Sequence record: NC_010152.1
Direction: 5' to 3' (one strand)
DNA: 39,577 bases
Part shown: positions 3,122 through 29,212 of the stretch, one piece after another
Numbering within the stretch: the stretch's first letter is position 1
Layout of the letters: each line of letters begins with the position of its first letter
Notes under the pieces: model-generated
Databases searched by the model: none
Told to the model about the DNA's origin: nothing
The model's input: the letters and a program-made list of their open reading frames with translations, nothing else
Translations under genes and position numbers: made by a program

Positions 3122-4899
3122 CTACAGATCACCTCAACCATTTTTTCGCCTAGGACTGTTTTTGCTGTCTGCTTGTTCATGCATAATTCCGTCTTATTGC
3201 GTATTCCAGCTCTCATTAGCTGTACTGCTCTTTTTCTTCCAATGCCCGGTAATCTGACCAACGCTAAGGCTTCGCTTGGGACTCCATATCTGGTTTCTAG
3301 ATAGAGCATCTGTAGCTTCTTTGCTAGTTCTGTTCTGCCGAGTGCTTTTGATATTCTGTATACGCCGTATGTTTGCCATGCCAACGTTTCCACTAGTTTG
3401 TTCAAGTCGTGTAGTGACATTCCCTTCGTACTCTTGACGATGATTTTGTCGTCAACTCCTTTTATCCAGTTTTCAAAGATTGTTCTCACGTTTTCACCTT
3501 TTGATGCGTCTAGTACATTTCTGTTTTCTAGTATTGCATTCATGACGTCTTCTACAGACGTGTTGTCTCTGTCCAACACGTCTTTATACGCTATTGCGTC
3601 TCTGACGTCGAAATATGATTCAGCGACGGCTCTTCCGTAAGTTGTCGTATAGTATCCTGTGTTATCATGACCTAAAATGTTGGCTTCAACTAGTTTGTTT
3701 GCTGTCTCTATTATTTCGTCTTCGTCTAGGTCTTTGAAGGACAGCGTGAACTTTGCTACTCTCTTCAACTTATCCTCTTTCATATACACGTACTTGGATA
3801 CTGTTGCGAGTATGAAGTCTTCTAAAACGTGGTGTGGCGTTAGACTTCCATAGTTGACGTTGAAGTAACGTCTTGCCAATTTTTCAGCTTCTTTCATGTC
3901 AGTTGCTTCAATTACACAAAGTCCTTCTTCGTCATATCCGGGTCTTCCTGCTCTTCCGCAAATTTGGTCGAATTCGATTGGTGTTAGTGATCTCCACCCT
4001 AGAAATCTTCCGTACTCGATGATGGGGAGCTTTAGATCGTCAAATATGACTGCGTAGAATGGGAAGTTTACGCCTTGTCCTAATGCGGTTGTTGTTATAA
4101 TGATGTTATACTTTCCCTGCTTGGTTTCTTCTAGCAGTCTCAGTTTGGCGTCTGGTTCTAATCCTGCATGGAAGAACGCAACTCTCCCTCTGTATCTTCT
4201 ATCATAAATTAGGTAAAGTTCTTCTGCCTTTTTTCTGGTGCTTGTGAAGATCATTACGACCTTGCCTTTTCTTACAAGTTTCGTAACTATATCCTCTTTC
4301 ATTTCTATCTTGTCCCCATCCTCAAAAATTAGTGTTTTTCCTATTTTGATTGCCTTGTAAATGGGTATCGGTCTCTCGTCAGTTTTTAACACTTCGGCGT
4401 TCGTAACGTCAGCGATCTTATCCACGTCCGGAATAGTTGCGCTCATCATTATGAGCCGTATTTCCTCATTCATTGCATACGCCATAAGGTTCTCTATTGC
4501 TTTACCTCTCTCTTTATCACCAACGTTGTGTATTTCGTCTATGATAATCATATTCACGTTGTTTGTCCATCCGTAATGTCTTCTCAAGACTGCATCAGCC
4601 TTTTCATACGTTGTAAAGATGATCTTGGCGTCTATGTTCTCGGGATCTTCGTCGTAAACTTCGCTTGTTAGTGCGGTAGTTGGTGTTGTTGGGGAGATTT
4701 TCTTCTGGAAGTCGTCATTTAGCTGTAGAGCCAACGCTTTCAGAGGGACAGTGTAGAGTACTCTTCCGTTTGCTTCGCTTGACATTAGCATTGCTAGGAA
4801 TGATTTTCCTGTACCGGTGGGTGCTGAGATTAGTATGTTTTTACTCGTGTTGTGGAATACGTTGAGTACTTTTTGTTGGAATTCATTGAGCTTTACCAT
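3118..4899 (-). CDS. SF2 helicase, Ski2/Hel308(Hjm)-like (593 aa from ATG 4899)
   Basis: [32 protein letters not shown] and a C-terminal HhH (LPGIGRKRA). Second ATG chosen because it follows a GGTGA SD. Confidence 0.95.
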
Positions 4900-5122
4900 T
4901 TTTCTCACCTGAGTAGAATTCTTTTTCGTCAATTCTGCGAATTACTGAAATTTTCGATATTTTGATATAAATCGGATTTCCTTGTTGATCTTCTCCTAAA
5001 ATATTGTTGTAGTCGTCAATTTCTACGATTTTTAGTCTGTATTTTCGTCCTTGGGCTAAGACTTCTATAATGTCTCCTACTGAGAATGAGATTTTCCCCA
5101 TGATTAATTTATTTTTAGCCAT
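4883..5122 (-). CDS. Small beta-barrel protein, putative Sm/LSm/Hfq-like fold (79 aa)
   Basis: First gene of the operon; AAAAAACTTAAA promoter ~25 nt upstream (leaderless). KIVEIDDYNNILGED and IYIKISKISVI resemble Sm1/Sm2. The ORF is likely real; the fold is inferred. Confidence 0.6.
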   Translation of the reverse strand: MAKNKLIMGKISFSVGDIIEVLAQGRKYRLKIVEIDDYNNILGEDQQGNPIYIKISKISVIRRIDEKEFYSGEKNGKAQ

Positions 5123-5183
5123 TACTTTATGGTATCACATTCCAGAATTTAAGTTTTTTATCCCTCTTGTTCTAGTGTTATTC

Positions 5184-5369
5184 ATGAGAGTTATTGTCCA
5201 CGTTGAGGGTGTTGTAGACGTAGAGGAACCTTGTGAAGACGAATTGGAATGTCTTCTAATTTATTCACAAATGCTAGAAAAATATGAGAATGAGTTAGGG
5301 TATTGTTACGGAGTAAGTCTGCAAGAAAGAGTTAAGTGTTCTCATGGATATGTGGAAATAAAAAGGTAA
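5184..5369 (+). CDS. Hypothetical protein (61 aa, MRVIVHVEG...)
   Basis: Internal ATG of the tracked ORF 5070-5369, behind a divergent TATA-like element; N-terminus resembles ORF 1998-2240. Confidence 0.55.
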   Translation: MRVIVHVEGVVDVEEPCEDELECLLIYSQMLEKYENELGYCYGVSLQERVKCSHGYVEIKR

Positions 5370-21046: not shown

Positions 21047-21121
21047 TGTGTATATCTAGCAAAACCAGCTTAAAAAATTTGGAGTAGTGATACCAGTCTA
21101 GATAAAATAGGCGTTGAGGTG

Positions 21122-21355
21122 ATGAACGAGAAGACGTCACCAATAGGAACGATCAAGAGAAAAAGGTTGACGTTTTCAGCAATAAAACGGGAAATGCGCT
21201 CAAGGAATGATAAGATAGTACAAGCAACAGTAATTGCAACGTTGGCTAAATTTATCATGTTACCTTACCTTCAATCACGTATTCCCTCGCACGTTTCTTC
21301 ACTTTCGCAACAAGATCGTCGTATTCGTCTTTCCCCATCGTCAAAGCGTGGTTAA
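21122..21355 (+). CDS. Small basic hypothetical protein (77 aa)
   Basis: GAGGTG SD immediately upstream; 3' end overlaps the glycosyltransferase antisense by ~100 nt. Confidence 0.45.
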   Translation: MNEKTSPIGTIKRKRLTFSAIKREMRSRNDKIVQATVIATLAKFIMLPYLQSRIPSHVSSLSQQDRRIRLSPSSKRG

Positions 21356-22094
21356 TCTCGTAGCGAAGCTCGTGAAGACTAAAATCCCACACTTTGAAGA
21401 AATTAACACCATCTGGCGTGTAAGTATACTCATCCACGGGATCAACGGGCAGTCCCACCAGGTTCTCACGATAGCCGTGTGCATTGACGAAGATTGGGAT
21501 AGTACCCACAGCCATTGCTTCCACGGGTGGTAGACCAAAGCCCTCACTCTTTGATAGTGCTAGGAAGAATTTTGCCCTAGCGTAAAGTTCGTATTTTTGT
21601 TGTTCAGTGAGGGAGAATGCGGGGTAATCAGGATTGCCCAGATTTCCAACGATAATCGTTTGAGAGCGTAAACCCATTTCTCTAGTTAGTGAGTCAACGA
21701 GAGTAAGGTTTTTCCTATCAAAGAACCTGCTTTCCCCCAGCGTCACAAACAGCTTATCCCTCTTTTCCTCCACTTGGATGGGGCGAATGTGCCTCTTCTT
21801 CATCCCCTTTGGCGGAAAACCAACCTTGACGAACATTTCAAAGTTCCACATCGATGCGACAATAAAGTTGTCGTAATGTGCCATTTCCTTCATGTAGAAA
21901 AGTGCGTTATAGACCGTATCTCCCCACAGCAAGCAGTGAACGTCATCCACTACACCCTTAATCCTTTTTAGAAAGAGTACGGGATCGTCAATGCAAACTT
22001 CAGCCTCAAACAAGTTTCTGGTAACGACAAACCCTTCGTACTTGGCTACATTCTCGTAAGAGCATTTCTCACATGGGACGTAAGCGAGAGTCAT
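21255..22094 (-). CDS. GT-B (GT4-like) glycosyltransferase (279 aa)
   Basis: FLALSKSEGFGLPPVEAMAVG (EX7E). Confidence 0.92.
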   Translation of the reverse strand: MTLAYVPCEKCSYENVAKYEGFVVTRNLFEAEVCIDDPVLFLKRIKGVVDDVHCLLWGDTVYNALFYMKEMAHYDNFIVASMWNFEMFVKVGFPPKGMKKRHIRPIQVEEKRDKLFVTLGESRFFDRKNLTLVDSLTREMGLRSQTIIVGNLGNPDYPAFSLTEQQKYELYARAKFFLALSKSEGFGLPPVEAMAVGTIPIFVNAHGYRENLVGLPVDPVDEYTYTPDGVNFFKVWDFSLHELRYEINHALTMGKDEYDDLVAKVKKRAREYVIEGKVT

Positions 22095-22378
22095 GGGTTA
22101 CACAACTTACTATTCTTCAACTCGGGTATATAAGTGCATAAAACAACTATTATTTGATTCAATACTTTAAATTCCTGGCTTTCATTTAATGCTTCTTTTA
22201 CTGTCTTTCTAATTCTTCTTTCGAATTCTTCACTCAAGATAATTTGTTGGACTATTTTTTCAATTTCCTTTTGAGTTTCTTCTTTTCGTGATTTGTTGAT
22301 TCTATATAGGTAAAATAGTACAGTAATGAATGTTGCTAATTCATATGTTATGAATTCCATCTCTAATATTAGAGACAT
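22091..22378 (-). CDS. Membrane protein (95 aa), probable virus-associated pyramid protein (SIFV gp43-like)
   Basis: N-terminal TM helix, helical body, C-terminal Cys pair; position relative to the MCPs matches SIFV gp43 as I recall it. Confidence 0.55.
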   Translation of the reverse strand: MSLILEMEFITYELATFITVLFYLYRINKSRKEETQKEIEKIVQQIILSEEFERRIRKTVKEALNESQEFKVLNQIIVVLCTYIPELKNSKLCNP

Positions 22379-22418
22379 GAGTAAAAATAAATAGAACGCT
22401 AAAATATAAATATTCAGG

Positions 22419-23222
22419 ATGCAGTTAGCTTACGCAGTTGACCACGAGAATAAGATAATATATTACGACGAGAAGATGAAGGATGTGATACCATCACTAG
22501 ATTATAAGAAAGTTAAAATTACTTCTAGCATATCTACATCGAAAATAAAAGAAGAGAAACTGTTTCTTTTTGTATCAAGTGTTGATAATACTTTATTATA
22601 CAAGAATGAGTGGTTGGGAACACACCCAAATGGTTTATTACTTCTACCCGGCGTATTTTTTAGAACGGCAAACGCTTCGATGGGATTCATTTTCCAAAAT
22701 CTTGGTTTGACTGCTTGGCACAACGTAATGATAGCACCGCACTCGAAGGGTGAGACTCCAAACGTTCCCATGATTTCATATTATGATAAAAGGCAATGGA
22801 AAGTGCATATTCTAACTAGACCTGCAGTGTTTGTTAGTGTGTATAAGAAATTGATGAAAATGATACTAGATTATGACGTTGCAATAGTTGAAACGACATA
22901 TACGTACCCATATAAATATCCGGCAGTTCTAGGAAAAGAGGTGTGTGCGTATGGTGTTATTTCTGCGACTAATGGCGTAGCAACTTTTGCAAGTTATTTG
23001 CCATCTATTATAGAGGTAAAGAGTGAATGTCCAAGCCTTGAAAGGGGAATGGAGGTGACTCTTGCGAGTGCGTATTCTGGTATAAGGAAAGGTAGAGTTA
23101 TAAGCACTAATGTGGAAATAGCGTATCACGTTGTACCAAAATTTTTGATACAAATAAAAAAGAGTTTCATGATAGATATTCCATCAATACCTGGTGATTC
23201 GGGCGGGGCAGTTTATATTTAA
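22419..23222 (+). CDS. Trypsin/chymotrypsin-like (PA clan) serine protease (267 aa)
   Basis: LTAWH (H101), DYDVAIV (D153) and PGDSGG (S261) in canonical order. Confidence 0.85.
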   Translation: MQLAYAVDHENKIIYYDEKMKDVIPSLDYKKVKITSSISTSKIKEEKLFLFVSSVDNTLLYKNEWLGTHPNGLLLLPGVFFRTANASMGFIFQNLGLTAWHNVMIAPHSKGETPNVPMISYYDKRQWKVHILTRPAVFVSVYKKLMKMILDYDVAIVETTYTYPYKYPAVLGKEVCAYGVISATNGVATFASYLPSIIEVKSECPSLERGMEVTLASAYSGIRKGRVISTNVEIAYHVVPKFLIQIKKSFMIDIPSIPGDSGGAVYI

Positions 23223-23281
23223 GTATTGTATCCTTTAGATATTTATATTTCTTGCACATTTATTATAGTTGAGGATAAAAA

Positions 23282-23497
23282 ATGAGCTACGCCCAAATAA
23301 GCTCTGCCTTAACAAGTGTAGCAACAAACCTAGTAGTAGCAATATCAAACTTCCTATCCGGCATCGCAAGCTTTATTGCCAACAACGCTGACCTATTCGT
23401 GGGAATTGCAATAGCAGGACTCGTCATCGGGCTAGTTGCGAAATTCGCATCAAGTCTACCATTTGTAGGGCAGTTCCTCAGCTATCTAGGTTTATAA
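23282..23497 (+). CDS. Small hydrophobic/amphipathic virion-type protein (71 aa)
   Basis: GAGG SD; long amphipathic helix plus TM segment. Confidence 0.75.
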   Translation: MSYAQISSALTSVATNLVVAISNFLSGIASFIANNADLFVGIAIAGLVIGLVAKFASSLPFVGQFLSYLGL

Positions 23498-27478: not shown

Positions 27479-28007
27479 TATACTTGTCGTCAATCACGTA
27501 TTTTTTTCCATTAACGAAATGATAAGTACCCGGAATAACTTTCATGATAGGAATAAGACGAGAGGAGAGATAAATATCAACAAAATGGGTCCTGTACAAC
27601 TCATTCTTGAGATAGTCGTCCATAACATCTCTAGCGAATTTTAGAAAAGATGAAGGAATGAAAAGATTAGTGGACATGCAGAAAAGTATAACGTCGTCCG
27701 AAGGCTTAGCCCTAGCTGGTATGCAGAAAGAGTAAATATTCCTAGGTAACTCGACAGGAGGAATGTAGACGTCACTATCAACTAGAAATAAGTCGTCATT
27801 AACCCTAGAGAATATCTCCCTTAGTATGAAAGCTATCCTATATCTTCTAGACTCCCAACTGTCGTCACTTACACCACTACTAACGTGAATTATGTTCGGA
27901 TGATCAATCCTTTCCAAGCACTGATTATAGTCATCGTCTACAAAAACAATATCGTAATTCATTAGAGGGAAATAGCAAAAGTTACCTCCAAAAGTAACGA
28001 CTTTCAT
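27462..28007 (-). CDS. GT-A fold glycosyltransferase (181 aa)
   Basis: DIVFVDD and LFLVDSDV (DxD) motifs; C-terminal His. Confidence 0.75.
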   Translation of the reverse strand: MKVVTFGGNFCYFPLMNYDIVFVDDDYNQCLERIDHPNIIHVSSGVSDDSWESRRYRIAFILREIFSRVNDDLFLVDSDVYIPPVELPRNIYSFCIPARAKPSDDVILFCMSTNLFIPSSFLKFARDVMDDYLKNELYRTHFVDIYLSSRLIPIMKVIPGTYHFVNGKKYVIDDKYIIQPA

Positions 28008-29212
28008 GTCTGCGCTTGTACCTCATATTCAAAGTTAATTGTGAGAGTAACTTGTTGACTTAACGAGGCGTTAATATCCAGAGTCACTACTACATTAAGC
28101 GTTTGTCCACCGTAATAATCCTCTAGGTTAAACTCAGCAAAAGTTTGCCCTTCTAGAACGTTAACTTGTTGCGATGCTACAACTACACCAGATGATGTTT
28201 CAATATCAATCGTGATCGTGAATGTAGTGAATCCACTCGTACATGGTGTAGTCGAACACGAGAGTGAATATGATGGAATGATCTTAAAGTACCCAACTGG
28301 TACTAGCAACGTGTAAGTCTTTTGTATTGATCCGTTGAACGGCGTTTGAACGCTGAAAACATACTCCTGTGGGTTTAGAATGTTATTATACCCTGTCACG
28401 TTAAACACGAATATTTGAGATATCTGACAAGATGAGTTTGCGTAAGGTATTGCAATGACTTGACTCCAAGTTATTTGATAGTCGTTGTTTGCAGTCCCAG
28501 TGAAAGTTACTGAATCAAGTTCACTTACTGACGTCATTGAAATGTTGGTAGCAGTTATTGAACCAGAGTTGAGAGTTGCCGTAACAGAATACGAGGTCAA
28601 ATCGGATGGTCCGCCCGATACACTCATTATGCTAACGTATCCTGATTCACTGTAATTCACAGTCACGGAATAAGATAGTGATTGATTGTAGAAGTAAAGT
28701 GGCTCAATGTAATAAGTAATTGGCTGTGAAAAGAATGCAACATCACCTATTGATGCAAAACCATAATAGGGAATCGTTACAGATATTTCAATACTAGCAG
28801 TACCACTTGGAACTGGTACAGCAATCATGTAATATGTTCCACTCCCTGCACTAAGAGAAACTGAATATGAGTAAGAACCTATACTTGAGCCACTAGTATT
28901 AAGGAAATTAAGAGCAATTGTAAAAGTTGCACTACTTGGTAAAGAAGATGATCCAATATAATACAAACTCCCTATTACAACAACCCAGACGTTCTCAGGA
29001 TTATAAACAAGCTCACTATAAGGTACTGTTACCGTGATTGTAGCTGTGGCTGTAGCTGATTCACCAGTAGTAAAAGCCAAACCATATCCACAATTACCGC
29101 ATGGATCACCTACATACCCAGAATATGATGCACCAACACTTCCTCCACTAGCTGAGAATATGCCAGTTTCTATTGGATTACAAACATTGTACCACGCTAT
29201 TTGAATTCCCAT
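28004..29212 (-). CDS. S/T/Y-rich beta-sandwich putative virion terminal protein (~402 aa)
   Basis: Composition typical of extracellular or virion proteins; ATG 29212 preferred over TTG 29221. Confidence 0.8.
   Translation of the reverse strand: MGIQIAWYNVCNPIETGIFSASGGSVGASYSGYVGDPCGNCGYGLAFTTGESATATATITVTVPYSELVYNPENVWVVVIGSLYYIGSSSLPSSATFTIALNFLNTSGSSIGSYSYSVSLSAGSGTYYMIAVPVPSGTASIEISVTIPYYGFASIGDVAFFSQPITYYIEPLYFYNQSLSYSVTVNYSESGYVSIMSVSGGPSDLTSYSVTATLNSGSITATNISMTSVSELDSVTFTGTANNDYQITWSQVIAIPYANSSCQISQIFVFNVTGYNNILNPQEYVFSVQTPFNGSIQKTYTLLVPVGYFKIIPSYSLSCSTTPCTSGFTTFTITIDIETSSGVVVASQQVNVLEGQTFAEFNLEDYYGGQTLNVVVTLDINASLSQQVTLTINFEYEVQAQT

What the first reader, a model, noticed from the sequence alone, without database searches (positions are those of the whole stretch)
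22419..23222. Trypsin-like protease that ends right after GDSGG, probably circularly permuted
Seen in sequence: the H101/D153/S261 triad motifs, with a stop only 6 residues after S261. The last strands and helix of the chymotrypsin fold are therefore missing from the C-terminus, and no alternative frame supplies them. The N-terminus (QLAYAV...KIIYY...MKDVIPSL) has the strand-strand-helix pattern of that missing segment (cf. vGllfAg...~~pi..vl..l). Inference: a permuted PA-clan protease. It sits among virion and egress genes, so it may mature virion, envelope or pyramid proteins. Maturation proteases are not part of the standard lipothrixvirus model as I know it.
Basis: partly seen in the sequence, partly recalled or inferred. 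Interest (0 to 1): 0.78.

Follow-up and report, generated by a model that had tools for sequence, protein, structure and literature searches.

The report
Circularly permuted serine protease of lipothrixviruses
This gene of the archaeal filamentous virus AFV6, so far labelled only "virion structural protein", encodes a chymotrypsin-type serine protease whose chain stops just after the catalytic serine. The missing last strands and helix are most likely supplied by its own N-terminus, which would be a rare natural rewiring of one of biology's best-known enzyme folds.

Summary
The window is the complete genome of Acidianus filamentous virus 6. The ORF at 22419-23222 (+) is AFV6_gp44/ORF267b, annotated "virion structural protein".

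- **Observation:** confirmed. TAWH101, D153 and GDS261GG are present, and the TAA stop lies 6 codons after S261.
- **Not an error:** all 20 distinct family members, down to 24% identity, end 6-14 residues after the serine. Canonical relatives carry about 40-50 more residues.
- **Fold:** PDB profile hits (streptogrisins), weak Pfam Trypsin_2 hits and Foldseek hits (rice NAL1, M. tuberculosis MarP, NAPase, chymase, HtrA) all place it in the PA clan.
- **Model:** an AlphaFold2 model from the 20-sequence alignment is very confident (pLDDT 95, pTM 0.92). It shows strand-strand-helix at residues 2-23, a weaker variable linker at 30-55, and a final strand at 264-266. This fits a circular permutation cut in the hairpin after the serine.
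- **Limits:** Every sequence test of the permutation was uninformative.
- **Biology:** the gene is accessory. It is absent from AFV7 and SIFV and sits in a variable slot beside the homologue of SIFV0043 (from memory, the pyramid egress protein). An essential maturation role for core virion proteins is therefore unlikely.
- **Lead:** the best non-self structural match among viral proteins is tristromavirus VP3, a major membrane-associated virion protein.

The parts
22419..23222 (+). Whole gene AFV6_gp44 / ORF267b, 267 aa plus TAA stop: PA-clan (chymotrypsin-fold) serine protease of a small lipothrixvirus-specific family (phrog_18698).
   Evidence: ORF and annotation. Fold assignment.
22419..22505 (+). 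Residues 1-29: conserved N-terminal strand-strand-helix (E2-8, E13-16, H18-23). Proposed equivalent of the last two strands and the C-terminal helix of the canonical second barrel.
   Evidence: AF2 secondary structure and pLDDT about 96. It is as conserved as the core, 1.63 bits entropy against 1.48-1.76. All homologues start at the same Met. Physical placement in barrel 2 is inferred, not verified.
22506..22583 (+). Residues 30-55: variable, indel-rich linker that would join the old C-terminus to the old N-terminus.
   Evidence: Highest entropy (2.12 bits), 10 insert columns, and the only pLDDT dip (77 for residues 31-40).
22611..22634 (+). W65-L-G-T-H69-P-N-G72 motif. W65 and G72 are invariant and T/H/P/N nearly so. 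Its role is unknown and I know of no counterpart in canonical S1 proteases.
22710..22721 (+). T98-A-W-H101: catalytic histidine motif (compare TAAHC of family S1).
   Evidence: Invariant T98 and H101. Sequence read.
22869..22892 (+). D151-Y-D153-V-A-I-V-E158: catalytic acid motif (compare D-I-A-L-L). Position 153 is D in 16 members and E in 4.
23193..23207 (+). G259-D-S261-G-G263: nucleophile and oxyanion-hole motif, invariant in all 20 members.
   Evidence: Aligned to PGDSGG of streptogrisins A and B.
23208..23222 (+). A264-V-Y-I267 plus TAA: short last strand (E264-266) and stop. The tail after the Ser is 6 residues here and 6-14 across the family. This is the proposed cut site in the hairpin that follows the serine.
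   Evidence: In canonical chymotrypsin and in P0024 this strand runs on into the hairpin ...[19 protein letters not shown]....
22944..23030 (+). C176 (22944-22946) and C204 (23028-23030): cysteine pair that is present together or absent together across the family. Probable disulfide.
   Evidence: 17 of 20 members have both and 3 of 20 have neither. The disulfide itself is inferred.

Best explanation
AFV6 gp44 is a catalytically competent serine endopeptidase of the chymotrypsin (PA-clan, S1-like) fold with a circularly permuted chain.

Proposed layout:
- The polypeptide begins with what are normally the last two strands and the C-terminal helix of barrel 2 (residues 1-28).
- A variable linker (about 30-55) crosses back to barrel 1.
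- Barrel 1 carries His101 and Asp153.
- The first four strands of barrel 2 carry Gly259-Asp-Ser261. The chain ends in the strand right after the serine.
- The new termini sit where the hairpin turn after the serine used to be.

Inferred: the docking of residues 1-28 into barrel 2, and enzymatic activity.

Biology: it is an accessory late or structural-module gene of some lipothrixviruses whose product is recorded as a virion protein. It has no signal peptide or membrane segment. I therefore propose a protease packaged inside the enveloped virion that cuts viral or host proteins in trans during assembly or after entry. It is not an essential maturation protease of the core capsid proteins. The substrate is unknown.
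For: - Triad motifs are invariant in 20 members down to 24% identity; position 153 is D or E.
- The family profile's top four PDB hits are streptogrisin-type proteases, aligned through PGDSGG, E 0.005-0.03.
- 8 of 16 members weakly hit Pfam Trypsin_2.
- hhalign to the canonical cellular protease P0024 gives 97% probability.
- The AF2 model has pLDDT 95.2 and pTM 0.92, with both termini above 95. It agrees with the independent BFVD model, TM 0.92.
- The Foldseek PDB top 50 are all PA-clan proteases, probability up to 1.00.
- Tails after the Ser are 6-14 residues in 20 of 20 members, against about 42 in SGPA/SGPB and about 50 in chymotrypsin.
- Strand count: only four barrel-2 strands lie between the barrel linker and the C-terminus. 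The N-terminal hairpin brings the count to six (mapped with the SGPA alignment).
- The N-terminal block is as conserved as the core, while residues 30-55 are the most variable and least confident part.
- Tail length varies exactly at the proposed cut.
- No conserved neighbouring small ORF could supply the strands in trans.
- Virion association comes from the GenBank/RefSeq product names for AFV9 ORF269 and its orthologues and from phrog_18698.
Against:
- Moving residues 1-31 to the C-terminus did not extend or clearly improve matches to canonical proteases. PDB E-values were 0.0055 against 0.0098. hhalign and Pfam results were unchanged.
- The N-terminal piece alone finds only chance hits. It does not pick out the post-serine segment of P0024.
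- Foldseek TM-scores to canonical proteases are low (0.25-0.46).
- No biochemical data on activity were found.
- I could not see the experiment behind the "virion structural protein" label, because the papers are not held.
Confidence: 0.62

Rival explanations
1. Donor-strand complementation in trans. The N-terminal hairpin of one subunit completes barrel 2 of the next subunit. The protein would then polymerise into a sheath or matrix layer of the virion, and protease activity would be secondary or used only during assembly.
For: The protein is labelled a virion structural protein. The best non-self structural match among viral proteins is PFV1 VP3, the major sheath or membrane-associated virion protein of tristromaviruses. 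A 25-residue flexible linker would allow swapping. Other PA proteases, such as flavivirus NS2B-NS3 and HCV NS3-4A, complete their barrels with a strand from another chain (textbook knowledge).
Against: The AF2 monomer model is compact with pTM 0.92 and places both termini with pLDDT above 95. There are no oligomer data. The strict conservation of the whole triad is not needed for a purely structural role.
Confidence: 0.12
2. It is not a permutation. Barrel 2 is simply truncated to a four-stranded sheet, as barrel 1 is in picornavirus 2A proteases, and the N-terminal strand-strand-helix is an unrelated add-on such as a lid, an oligomerisation element or a pro-segment.
For: No sequence method links the N-terminal piece to the canonical post-serine segment. 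Foldseek TM-scores to canonical proteases are low. Coordinates were not inspected.
Against: In canonical enzymes the lost strands form the S1 pocket wall and the substrate-binding strand. A family that keeps the triad under selection needs them. The N-terminal elements have the right number, order and lengths, lie at the chain end adjacent to the cut, and are as conserved and as confidently modelled as the core.
Confidence: 0.15
3. It is a protease-derived structural protein with little or no trans activity, comparable to the alphavirus capsid protein. The fold was recruited as a virion building block, and the active site is used at most once, in cis.
For: The virion structural annotation. The structural similarity to PFV1 VP3. 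ICTV gives VP3 as 18 kDa while the database entry is 230 aa, which hints at processing.
Against: The protein is not part of a polyprotein and no cleavage product is known. The triad and GDSGG are invariant in all members. The gene is dispensable in AFV7 and SIFV, whose virions are otherwise similar, which is odd for a building block.
Confidence: 0.1
4. It is a truncated gene, a sequencing error, or a reading frame continued by recoding.
For: None beyond the unusual position of the stop.
Against: The same early stop occurs in 20 independent sequences from isolates and from metagenomes of several sources. Downstream DNA is an intergenic region and differs between viruses.
Confidence: 0.01

Closest known systems
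Streptogrisin A/B and related bacterial chymotrypsin-type proteases (MEROPS family S1, subfamily S1E; PDB 1sgc, 1cso, 2sfa)
   Same: They are the best sequence-profile matches. About 60 residues of barrel 2 align up to PGDSGG. They share the S1-type motifs TA-x-H, D-(I/V)-A and GDSGG, and the triad order His-Asp-Ser.
   Different: Streptogrisins continue for about 42 residues after the serine (strand, strand, strand, helix), while this family stops after 6-14. This family has about 60 extra N-terminal residues, several inserted hairpins, a WxGTHPNG motif, and scores below every Pfam or NCBIfam threshold.
Rice NARROW LEAF 1 (NAL1; PDB 8pml, 7y77, 8has) and Mycobacterium tuberculosis MarP/Rv3671c (3k6y, 3k6z)
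   Same: They are the top Foldseek matches in the PDB, E 8e-5 to 8e-4, probability about 1.0. The nearest canonical sequence relative, P0024, carries a faint Nal1_C signal.
   Different: TM-scores are only 0.3-0.4. These enzymes have the normal chain order. P0024 shows the ordinary post-serine hairpin, aligned to chymotrypsin residues 193-219.
Pyrobaculum filamentous virus 1 VP3 (Tristromaviridae), major sheath or membrane-associated virion protein
   Same: It is the best non-self structural match among predicted viral structures, E 7.8e-5, TM 0.49/0.56, higher than for any canonical viral protease. Both are virion proteins of enveloped filamentous archaeal viruses.
   Different: No sequence similarity is detectable. 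I could not obtain the VP3 sequence, so whether it keeps the triad or the permuted order is unknown.
Alphavirus capsid protease (chymotrypsin fold, virion structural protein)
   Same: It is a PA-clan protease that is also a virion component, so it is a functional analogy only (textbook knowledge, not tested here).
   Different: It has canonical chain order, is part of a polyprotein, and cleaves once in cis, after which its own C-terminus blocks the site. None of this is shown for gp44.
Flavivirus NS2B-NS3 and hepacivirus NS3-NS4A proteases
   Same: They are PA-clan barrels that are incomplete in one chain and are completed by strands supplied from elsewhere (textbook knowledge).
   Different: There the strand comes from a second polypeptide. 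Here no conserved partner gene exists, and the protein's own N-terminus is the candidate.

Membership tests
Clan PA (chymotrypsin-fold) peptidases | Double beta-barrel chymotrypsin fold | tested here: met
   The AF2 model (pLDDT 95.2) matches only PA-clan proteases at the top of the PDB search, with probability up to 1.00, and also in BFVD. TM-scores are modest (0.25-0.46).
Clan PA (chymotrypsin-fold) peptidases | Catalytic residues in the order His, Asp, Ser(Cys) along the chain | tested here: met
   H101, D/E153 and S261 are conserved in 20 of 20 members.
Clan PA (chymotrypsin-fold) peptidases | Triad and oxyanion hole assembled at the interface of the two barrels | not testable with these tools
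   Model coordinates are not exposed. Only secondary structure and pLDDT were returned.
Clan PA (chymotrypsin-fold) peptidases | Canonical topology: three strands and a helix follow the nucleophile | tested here: not met
   Only 6-14 residues follow the Ser in all 20 members, against about 42-50 in streptogrisins and chymotrypsin.
MEROPS S1 / Pfam Trypsin (PF00089), Trypsin_2 (PF13365) | Score above the curated family threshold | tested here: not met
   The AFV6 protein has no hit even at E 10. The best member reaches E 0.005 for Trypsin_2 and 0.03-0.04 for Trypsin. There is no NCBIfam hit.
MEROPS S1 / Pfam Trypsin (PF00089), Trypsin_2 (PF13365) | S1 signature motifs TAAHC-like, DIAL-like and GDSGGP-like | tested here: met
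   TAWH, D(V/T/A)A(I/L)(V/I/L) in most members, and GDSGG(A/P/G).
Circular permutant of a known fold | Elements missing at one terminus are present at the other, in the same order | tested here: met
   E2-8, E13-16 and H18-23 at the N-terminus correspond to the missing strand, strand and helix. E264-266 is the last element.
Circular permutant of a known fold | New N- and C-termini adjacent in space, with the relocated elements occupying their canonical positions | not testable with these tools
   This needs coordinates or a permutation-aware superposition.
Circular permutant of a known fold | Sequence similarity of the relocated segment to the canonical segment after re-permutation | tested here: inconclusive
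   No extension or gain with re-permuted profiles (vs 53, 54 vs 55, 72 vs 73). The piece alone gives chance hits. The segment is short and the family is remote, so the tests have little power.
Viral maturation (prohead/assemblin-type) proteases | Conserved in all relatives that share the substrate capsid proteins | tested here: not met
   Absent from AFV7, SIFV and SIFV2, which share the structural module.

The most novel reading that the evidence does not exclude
A natural circular permutation of the chymotrypsin fold. I know of no natural example, and three literature searches found none. It would have been recruited as an abundant internal or envelope-associated virion protein shared, at the level of structure, by two families of enveloped filamentous archaeal viruses (Lipothrixviridae gp44 family and Tristromaviridae VP3). 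That would make it a protease-derived matrix or sheath protein, possibly assembled by exchange of the relocated hairpin between subunits.
Probability: 0.25. Interest if true: 0.85.

Novelty: new variant of a known kind. Interest (0 to 1): 0.62.

Why it matters
**For protein evolution.** The chymotrypsin fold is among the most studied enzyme architectures. Its chain order is treated as invariant across thousands of families. A natural permutant with the cut six residues from the nucleophile would show that the fold tolerates re-threading next to the active site. It would also give a natural template for engineered split or caged proteases.

**For archaeal virology.** In the searchable literature I found no protease described for lipothrixviruses. 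A protease carried in the virion opens testable questions about processing of virion proteins, uncoating, or attack on host proteins in hyperthermophilic acidophiles. The structural link to tristromavirus VP3 would connect the poorly understood layer between nucleocapsid and envelope in two virus families.

**For annotation.** The label "virion structural protein / hypothetical protein" for phrog_18698 can be replaced by "PA-clan serine protease, permuted".

Tried and rejected
- **Single-sequence AF2** gave pLDDT 30 and was useless. It was superseded by the alignment-based model.
- **Re-permutation test.** I moved residues 1-31 to the C-terminus in 16 members (a rearrangement of the same ORF, with no read-through of the stop). 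I then searched PDB, Pfam and the canonical relative P0024.
  - Alignments still stop at GDSGGavy.
  - Scores barely change: E 0.0055 against 0.0098, hhalign 1.3e-10 against 4.8e-11, and identical Pfam counts.
  - The test is therefore uninformative.
- **N-terminal piece alone.**
  - A profile search of the PDB found only chance hits, such as a kinase HRD loop.
  - hmmsearch against P0024 found nothing.
- In an ungapped BLOSUM scan of P0024, the post-serine window is not the best window.
- **Truncation or sequencing error** was rejected.
- **Trans-complementing neighbour gene** was rejected because no partner is conserved across loci. ORF71b is a hydrophobic mini-protein.
- **SIFV0044**, which occupies the same slot, was tested as a degenerate homologue. 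It is unrelated.
- **More canonical relatives of P0024.** A scan of genome contigs found none.
- **PFV1, PFV2 and TTV1 records**, wanted to read VP3, are not in the collection.
- **Papers not held:** Vestergaard 2008, Rensen 2016, Krupovic 2018 and Baquero 2021.
- **Literature searches** for a lipothrixvirus protease, or for a natural permuted PA-clan protease, returned nothing relevant.
- **NCBIfam** has no family for it.

Full report
**Identity of the window and the ORF**

Megablast shows that the window is the complete 39,577-bp genome of Acidianus filamentous virus 6 (Betalipothrixvirus pozzuoliense, AM087121/NC_010152), at 100% identity. The ORF at 22419..23222 (+) is the annotated CDS AFV6_gp44 (ORF267b). 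The original record calls it "conserved hypothetical protein" and RefSeq calls it "virion structural protein". It matches PHROG 18698, "virion structural protein", end to end. The sequence shows the following:
- TAWH101
- LDYD153VAIVE
- PGDS261GGAVYI, followed by TAA at 23220-23222

**It is a chymotrypsin-fold serine protease**

- The AFV6 protein alone gets no Pfam hit, even at E = 10.
- Eight of 16 family members weakly hit Trypsin_2, best E 0.005, and one hits Trypsin.
- Profiles of the family find, as their four best PDB matches, Streptomyces griseus proteinases A and B and a related serine proteinase. About 60 residues align up to PGDSGG, with E 0.005-0.03.
- A profile search of 1.84 billion representative proteins finds only 11 proteins. 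Among the weakest hits is P0024, a 523-aa cellular protease with normal chain order. hhalign gives 97% probability for this relationship.
- With the 20-sequence alignment A3, AlphaFold2 gives mean pLDDT 95.2 and pTM 0.92, and all five models score at least 91.9.
- The model agrees with the independent BFVD model of the same protein, TM 0.92.
- Foldseek against the PDB returns only PA-clan proteases at the top: rice NAL1, M. tuberculosis MarP/Rv3671c, Nocardiopsis NAPase, chymase, V8 protease and HtrA. E-values reach 8e-5 and probabilities about 1.0, although TM-scores are only 0.25-0.46.
- H101 and GDSGG are invariant, and position 153 is Asp (16) or Glu (4), in 20 members that fall to 24% identity. 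That conservation argues for a working active site.

**The early stop is a family trait**

The family is small. Its members are:
- AFV3, AFV8 and AFV9 (ORF269)
- Saccharolobus shibatae filamentous virus 3 / "rod virus 2"
- about a dozen metagenomic proteins

Every one of the 20 distinct full-length members ends 6-14 residues after the serine. In the canonical proteins they align to, about 42 residues (SGPA/SGPB) or about 50 residues (chymotrypsin) follow the serine. Truncation, sequencing error and recoding are excluded. The gene that follows differs between viruses: ORF71b in AFV6, ORF218 in AFV9, a glycosyltransferase in a metagenomic contig, and other small ORFs elsewhere. No conserved partner could supply the missing strands in trans.

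**Evidence for circular permutation**

- The model's secondary structure begins with E2-8, E13-16 and H18-23 and ends with E264-266.
- I mapped the SGPA alignment onto the model. On that mapping, E212-217, E221-238, E242-252 and E264-266 are the first four strands of barrel 2. The two further strands and the terminal helix that the fold needs are exactly what the N-terminus offers, in the right order.
- Both termini are modelled with pLDDT 96-98. The only dip (77) is at residues 31-40.
- Residues 1-29 are as conserved as the catalytic core (1.63 bits against 1.48-1.76). Residues 30-55 are the most variable part (2.12 bits) and rich in indels. This is expected for a new linker joining the old C-terminus to the old N-terminus.
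- The length of the tail after the serine varies (6-14 residues) exactly where the hairpin turn would have been cut.
- In chymotrypsin and in P0024 the strand after the serine runs through a short turn into the next strand (…[24 protein letters not shown]…). Here the chain ends in the first strand (AVYI) and begins with the second (QLAYAVDH).

**Limits of that evidence**

The tools return no coordinates. I could not verify which strands pair, how close the termini lie, or whether the triad is assembled.

I also tried to obtain sequence evidence. I moved residues 1-31 to the C-terminus in 16 members.
- The re-permuted profile does not extend across the junction. It scores about the same as the native one against the PDB (E 0.0055 against 0.0098), against P0024 and against Pfam.
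- The N-terminal piece alone finds only chance matches.
- It does not single out the post-serine segment of P0024.

The permutation thus rests on the model's element order, the confidence and conservation pattern, and parsimony. It does not rest on detectable homology of the relocated segment. I put it at roughly 0.7.

**Genomic and biological context**

- The gene lies in the late or structural half of the genome.
  - To one side are the major capsid protein genes (ORF165, ORF204), two further "virion structural proteins" (ORF155b, ORF210), a glycosyltransferase and ORF95.
  - To the other side are ORF71b and a second glycosyltransferase.
- ORF95 is transcribed divergently from gp44. It is homologous to SIFV0043, BLASTP 8e-14. 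From memory of Baquero et al. 2021, which I could not open, SIFV0043 is the pyramid-forming egress protein.
- Linkage to a glycosyltransferase recurs in metagenomic contigs, including a distant one with ThyX and dUTPase genes. In SSRV2, however, the homologue sits near a genome end, far from the capsid genes.
- The gene is not universal.
  - AFV7 has ORF95 followed after 100 bp by ORF71. Only the downstream intergenic sequence is recognisable, so this is most likely a deletion.
  - SIFV carries an unrelated 156-aa gene in the same slot.
  - No similarity to gp44 was found elsewhere in the SIFV genomes.
- Because these viruses share the capsid proteins and the SIFV0043 homologue, gp44 cannot be an essential maturation protease for them.
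- The protein has no signal peptide or membrane segment (sequence).

**Virion association and the VP3 lead**

The AFV9 authors' record names ORF269 "viral structural protein". I could not see the underlying data.

Among predicted viral structures, the best non-self match is VP3 of Pyrobaculum filamentous virus 1, with E 7.8e-5 and TM 0.49/0.56. That is higher than for astrovirus, picornavirus, nidovirus or phage trypsin-like proteases. VP3 is the third major virion protein of tristromaviruses. It is described as a sheath between nucleocapsid and envelope, or as membrane-associated. The ICTV profile gives it as 18 kDa, although the database entry has 230 residues. I could not obtain its sequence, so this stays a lead.

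**Mechanism proposed**

- *Shown:* an S1-like triad under purifying selection, in a confidently predicted PA-clan domain, whose chain ends right after the nucleophile.
- *Inferred:* the protein's own N-terminal hairpin and helix complete barrel 2, giving an active endopeptidase.
- *Inferred with less confidence:* it is packaged inside the enveloped virion and cuts viral or host proteins in trans, during assembly or after delivery into the cell, as an accessory function.

Rivals, with my estimates:
- The hairpin is exchanged between subunits to build a sheath (0.12).
- Barrel 2 is truly truncated and the N-terminus is an unrelated add-on (0.15).
- It is a protease-derived structural protein with at most cis activity (0.10).
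- It is an artefact (0.01, refuted).

**Comparison with known families**

It works like, and clearly descends from, bacterial-type S1 proteases (streptogrisin, MarP and NAL1-like). It shares their motifs, triad order and fold. It fails the curated Pfam and NCBIfam thresholds, and it fails the canonical-topology criterion. It is best filed as a new, permuted family within clan PA rather than as a member of S1. Searches of the available literature found no lipothrixvirus protease. They also found no natural circularly permuted PA-clan protease. That is absence of evidence in a limited library.

**Verdict**

- The protease assignment and the conserved early stop are solid.
- The circular permutation is the best explanation, but one coordinate inspection short of shown.
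- The proposed maturation role is not supported as an essential function.
- Novelty: a new variant of a known kind.
- Interest: 0.62.

Noticed in passing
window 22379-23281, compared with L015 (AFV7, NC_010153) 3896-3996: AFV7 lacks the whole gene. Its ORF95 homologue is followed after 100 bp by its ORF71 homologue, and only the intergenic DNA downstream of gp44 is still recognisable. This is probably a clean deletion in AFV7, so the gene is dispensable for a viable betalipothrixvirus.
   Followed up: partly
window 22091-22378 (-), ORF95; L018 (SIFV) 5099-5368 and 4493-4963: ORF95, divergent neighbour of the protease gene, is homologous to SIFV0043 (BLASTP 8e-14). It has an N-terminal hydrophobic segment followed by a helical part. 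From memory, SIFV gp43 is the pyramid (VAP) egress protein. In SIFV the slot next to it holds an unrelated 156-aa gene, SIFV0044. The site between the pyramid gene and the glycosyltransferase is therefore a variable slot.
   Followed up: partly
window 23282-23497 (+) ORF71b and 21070-21258 (-) ORF62: Both small hydrophobic proteins hit the same PHROG (phrog_9875, E 6e-38 and 7e-27). They are paralogues flanking this region. Their function is unknown.
   Followed up: no
BFVD entry A0A140F3K9 (PFV1 VP3); no locus available: Tristromavirus major virion protein VP3 is the best non-self structural match of the gp44 model (E 7.8e-5, TM 0.49/0.56). No sequence similarity is detectable. ICTV lists VP3 as 18 kDa while the entry has 230 aa, which would fit proteolytic processing.
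   Followed up: partly
window 22944-22946 (C176) and 23028-23030 (C204): The two cysteines are present together in 17 of 20 family members and absent together in the other 3. This suggests a stabilising disulfide, as is common in proteins of hyperthermophile viruses.
   Followed up: partly
window 22611-22634 (W65-x-G-T-H-P-N-G72): This is the most conserved motif outside the triad. W65 and G72 are invariant and T68, H69, P70 and N71 nearly so. It lies before barrel 1, I know of no counterpart in canonical S1 proteases, and its role is unexplained.
   Followed up: no
metagenomic proteins P0022 (66 aa) and P0021 (85 aa): P0022 joins the first 37 residues of a family member directly to its last 29 residues, an internal deletion that keeps both chain ends. 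P0021 is a C-terminal fragment of the SSFV3-type protein with PCDSGG in place of PGDSGG. Both look like defective copies or assembly fragments.
   Followed up: no
L017 161-733 (GCA_038875175.1, contig JAVZAX010000047.1), protein P0017: The first 41 codons of the SSFV3-type protease gene are fused in frame to the C-terminal part of an MFS transporter. This occurs at the very end of a contig binned as a Thermoplasmatales archaeon and followed by ordinary cellular genes. It is most likely an assembly chimera, less likely a recombination scar.
   Followed up: partly
L016 (SSRV2, OQ473815) 27490-28392: In this lipothrixvirus-like genome, which has two capsid genes and lipothrixviral glycosyltransferases, the protease homologue lies near the right genome end among small unknown ORFs. 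It is far from the structural module, unlike in the Acidianus viruses.
   Followed up: no
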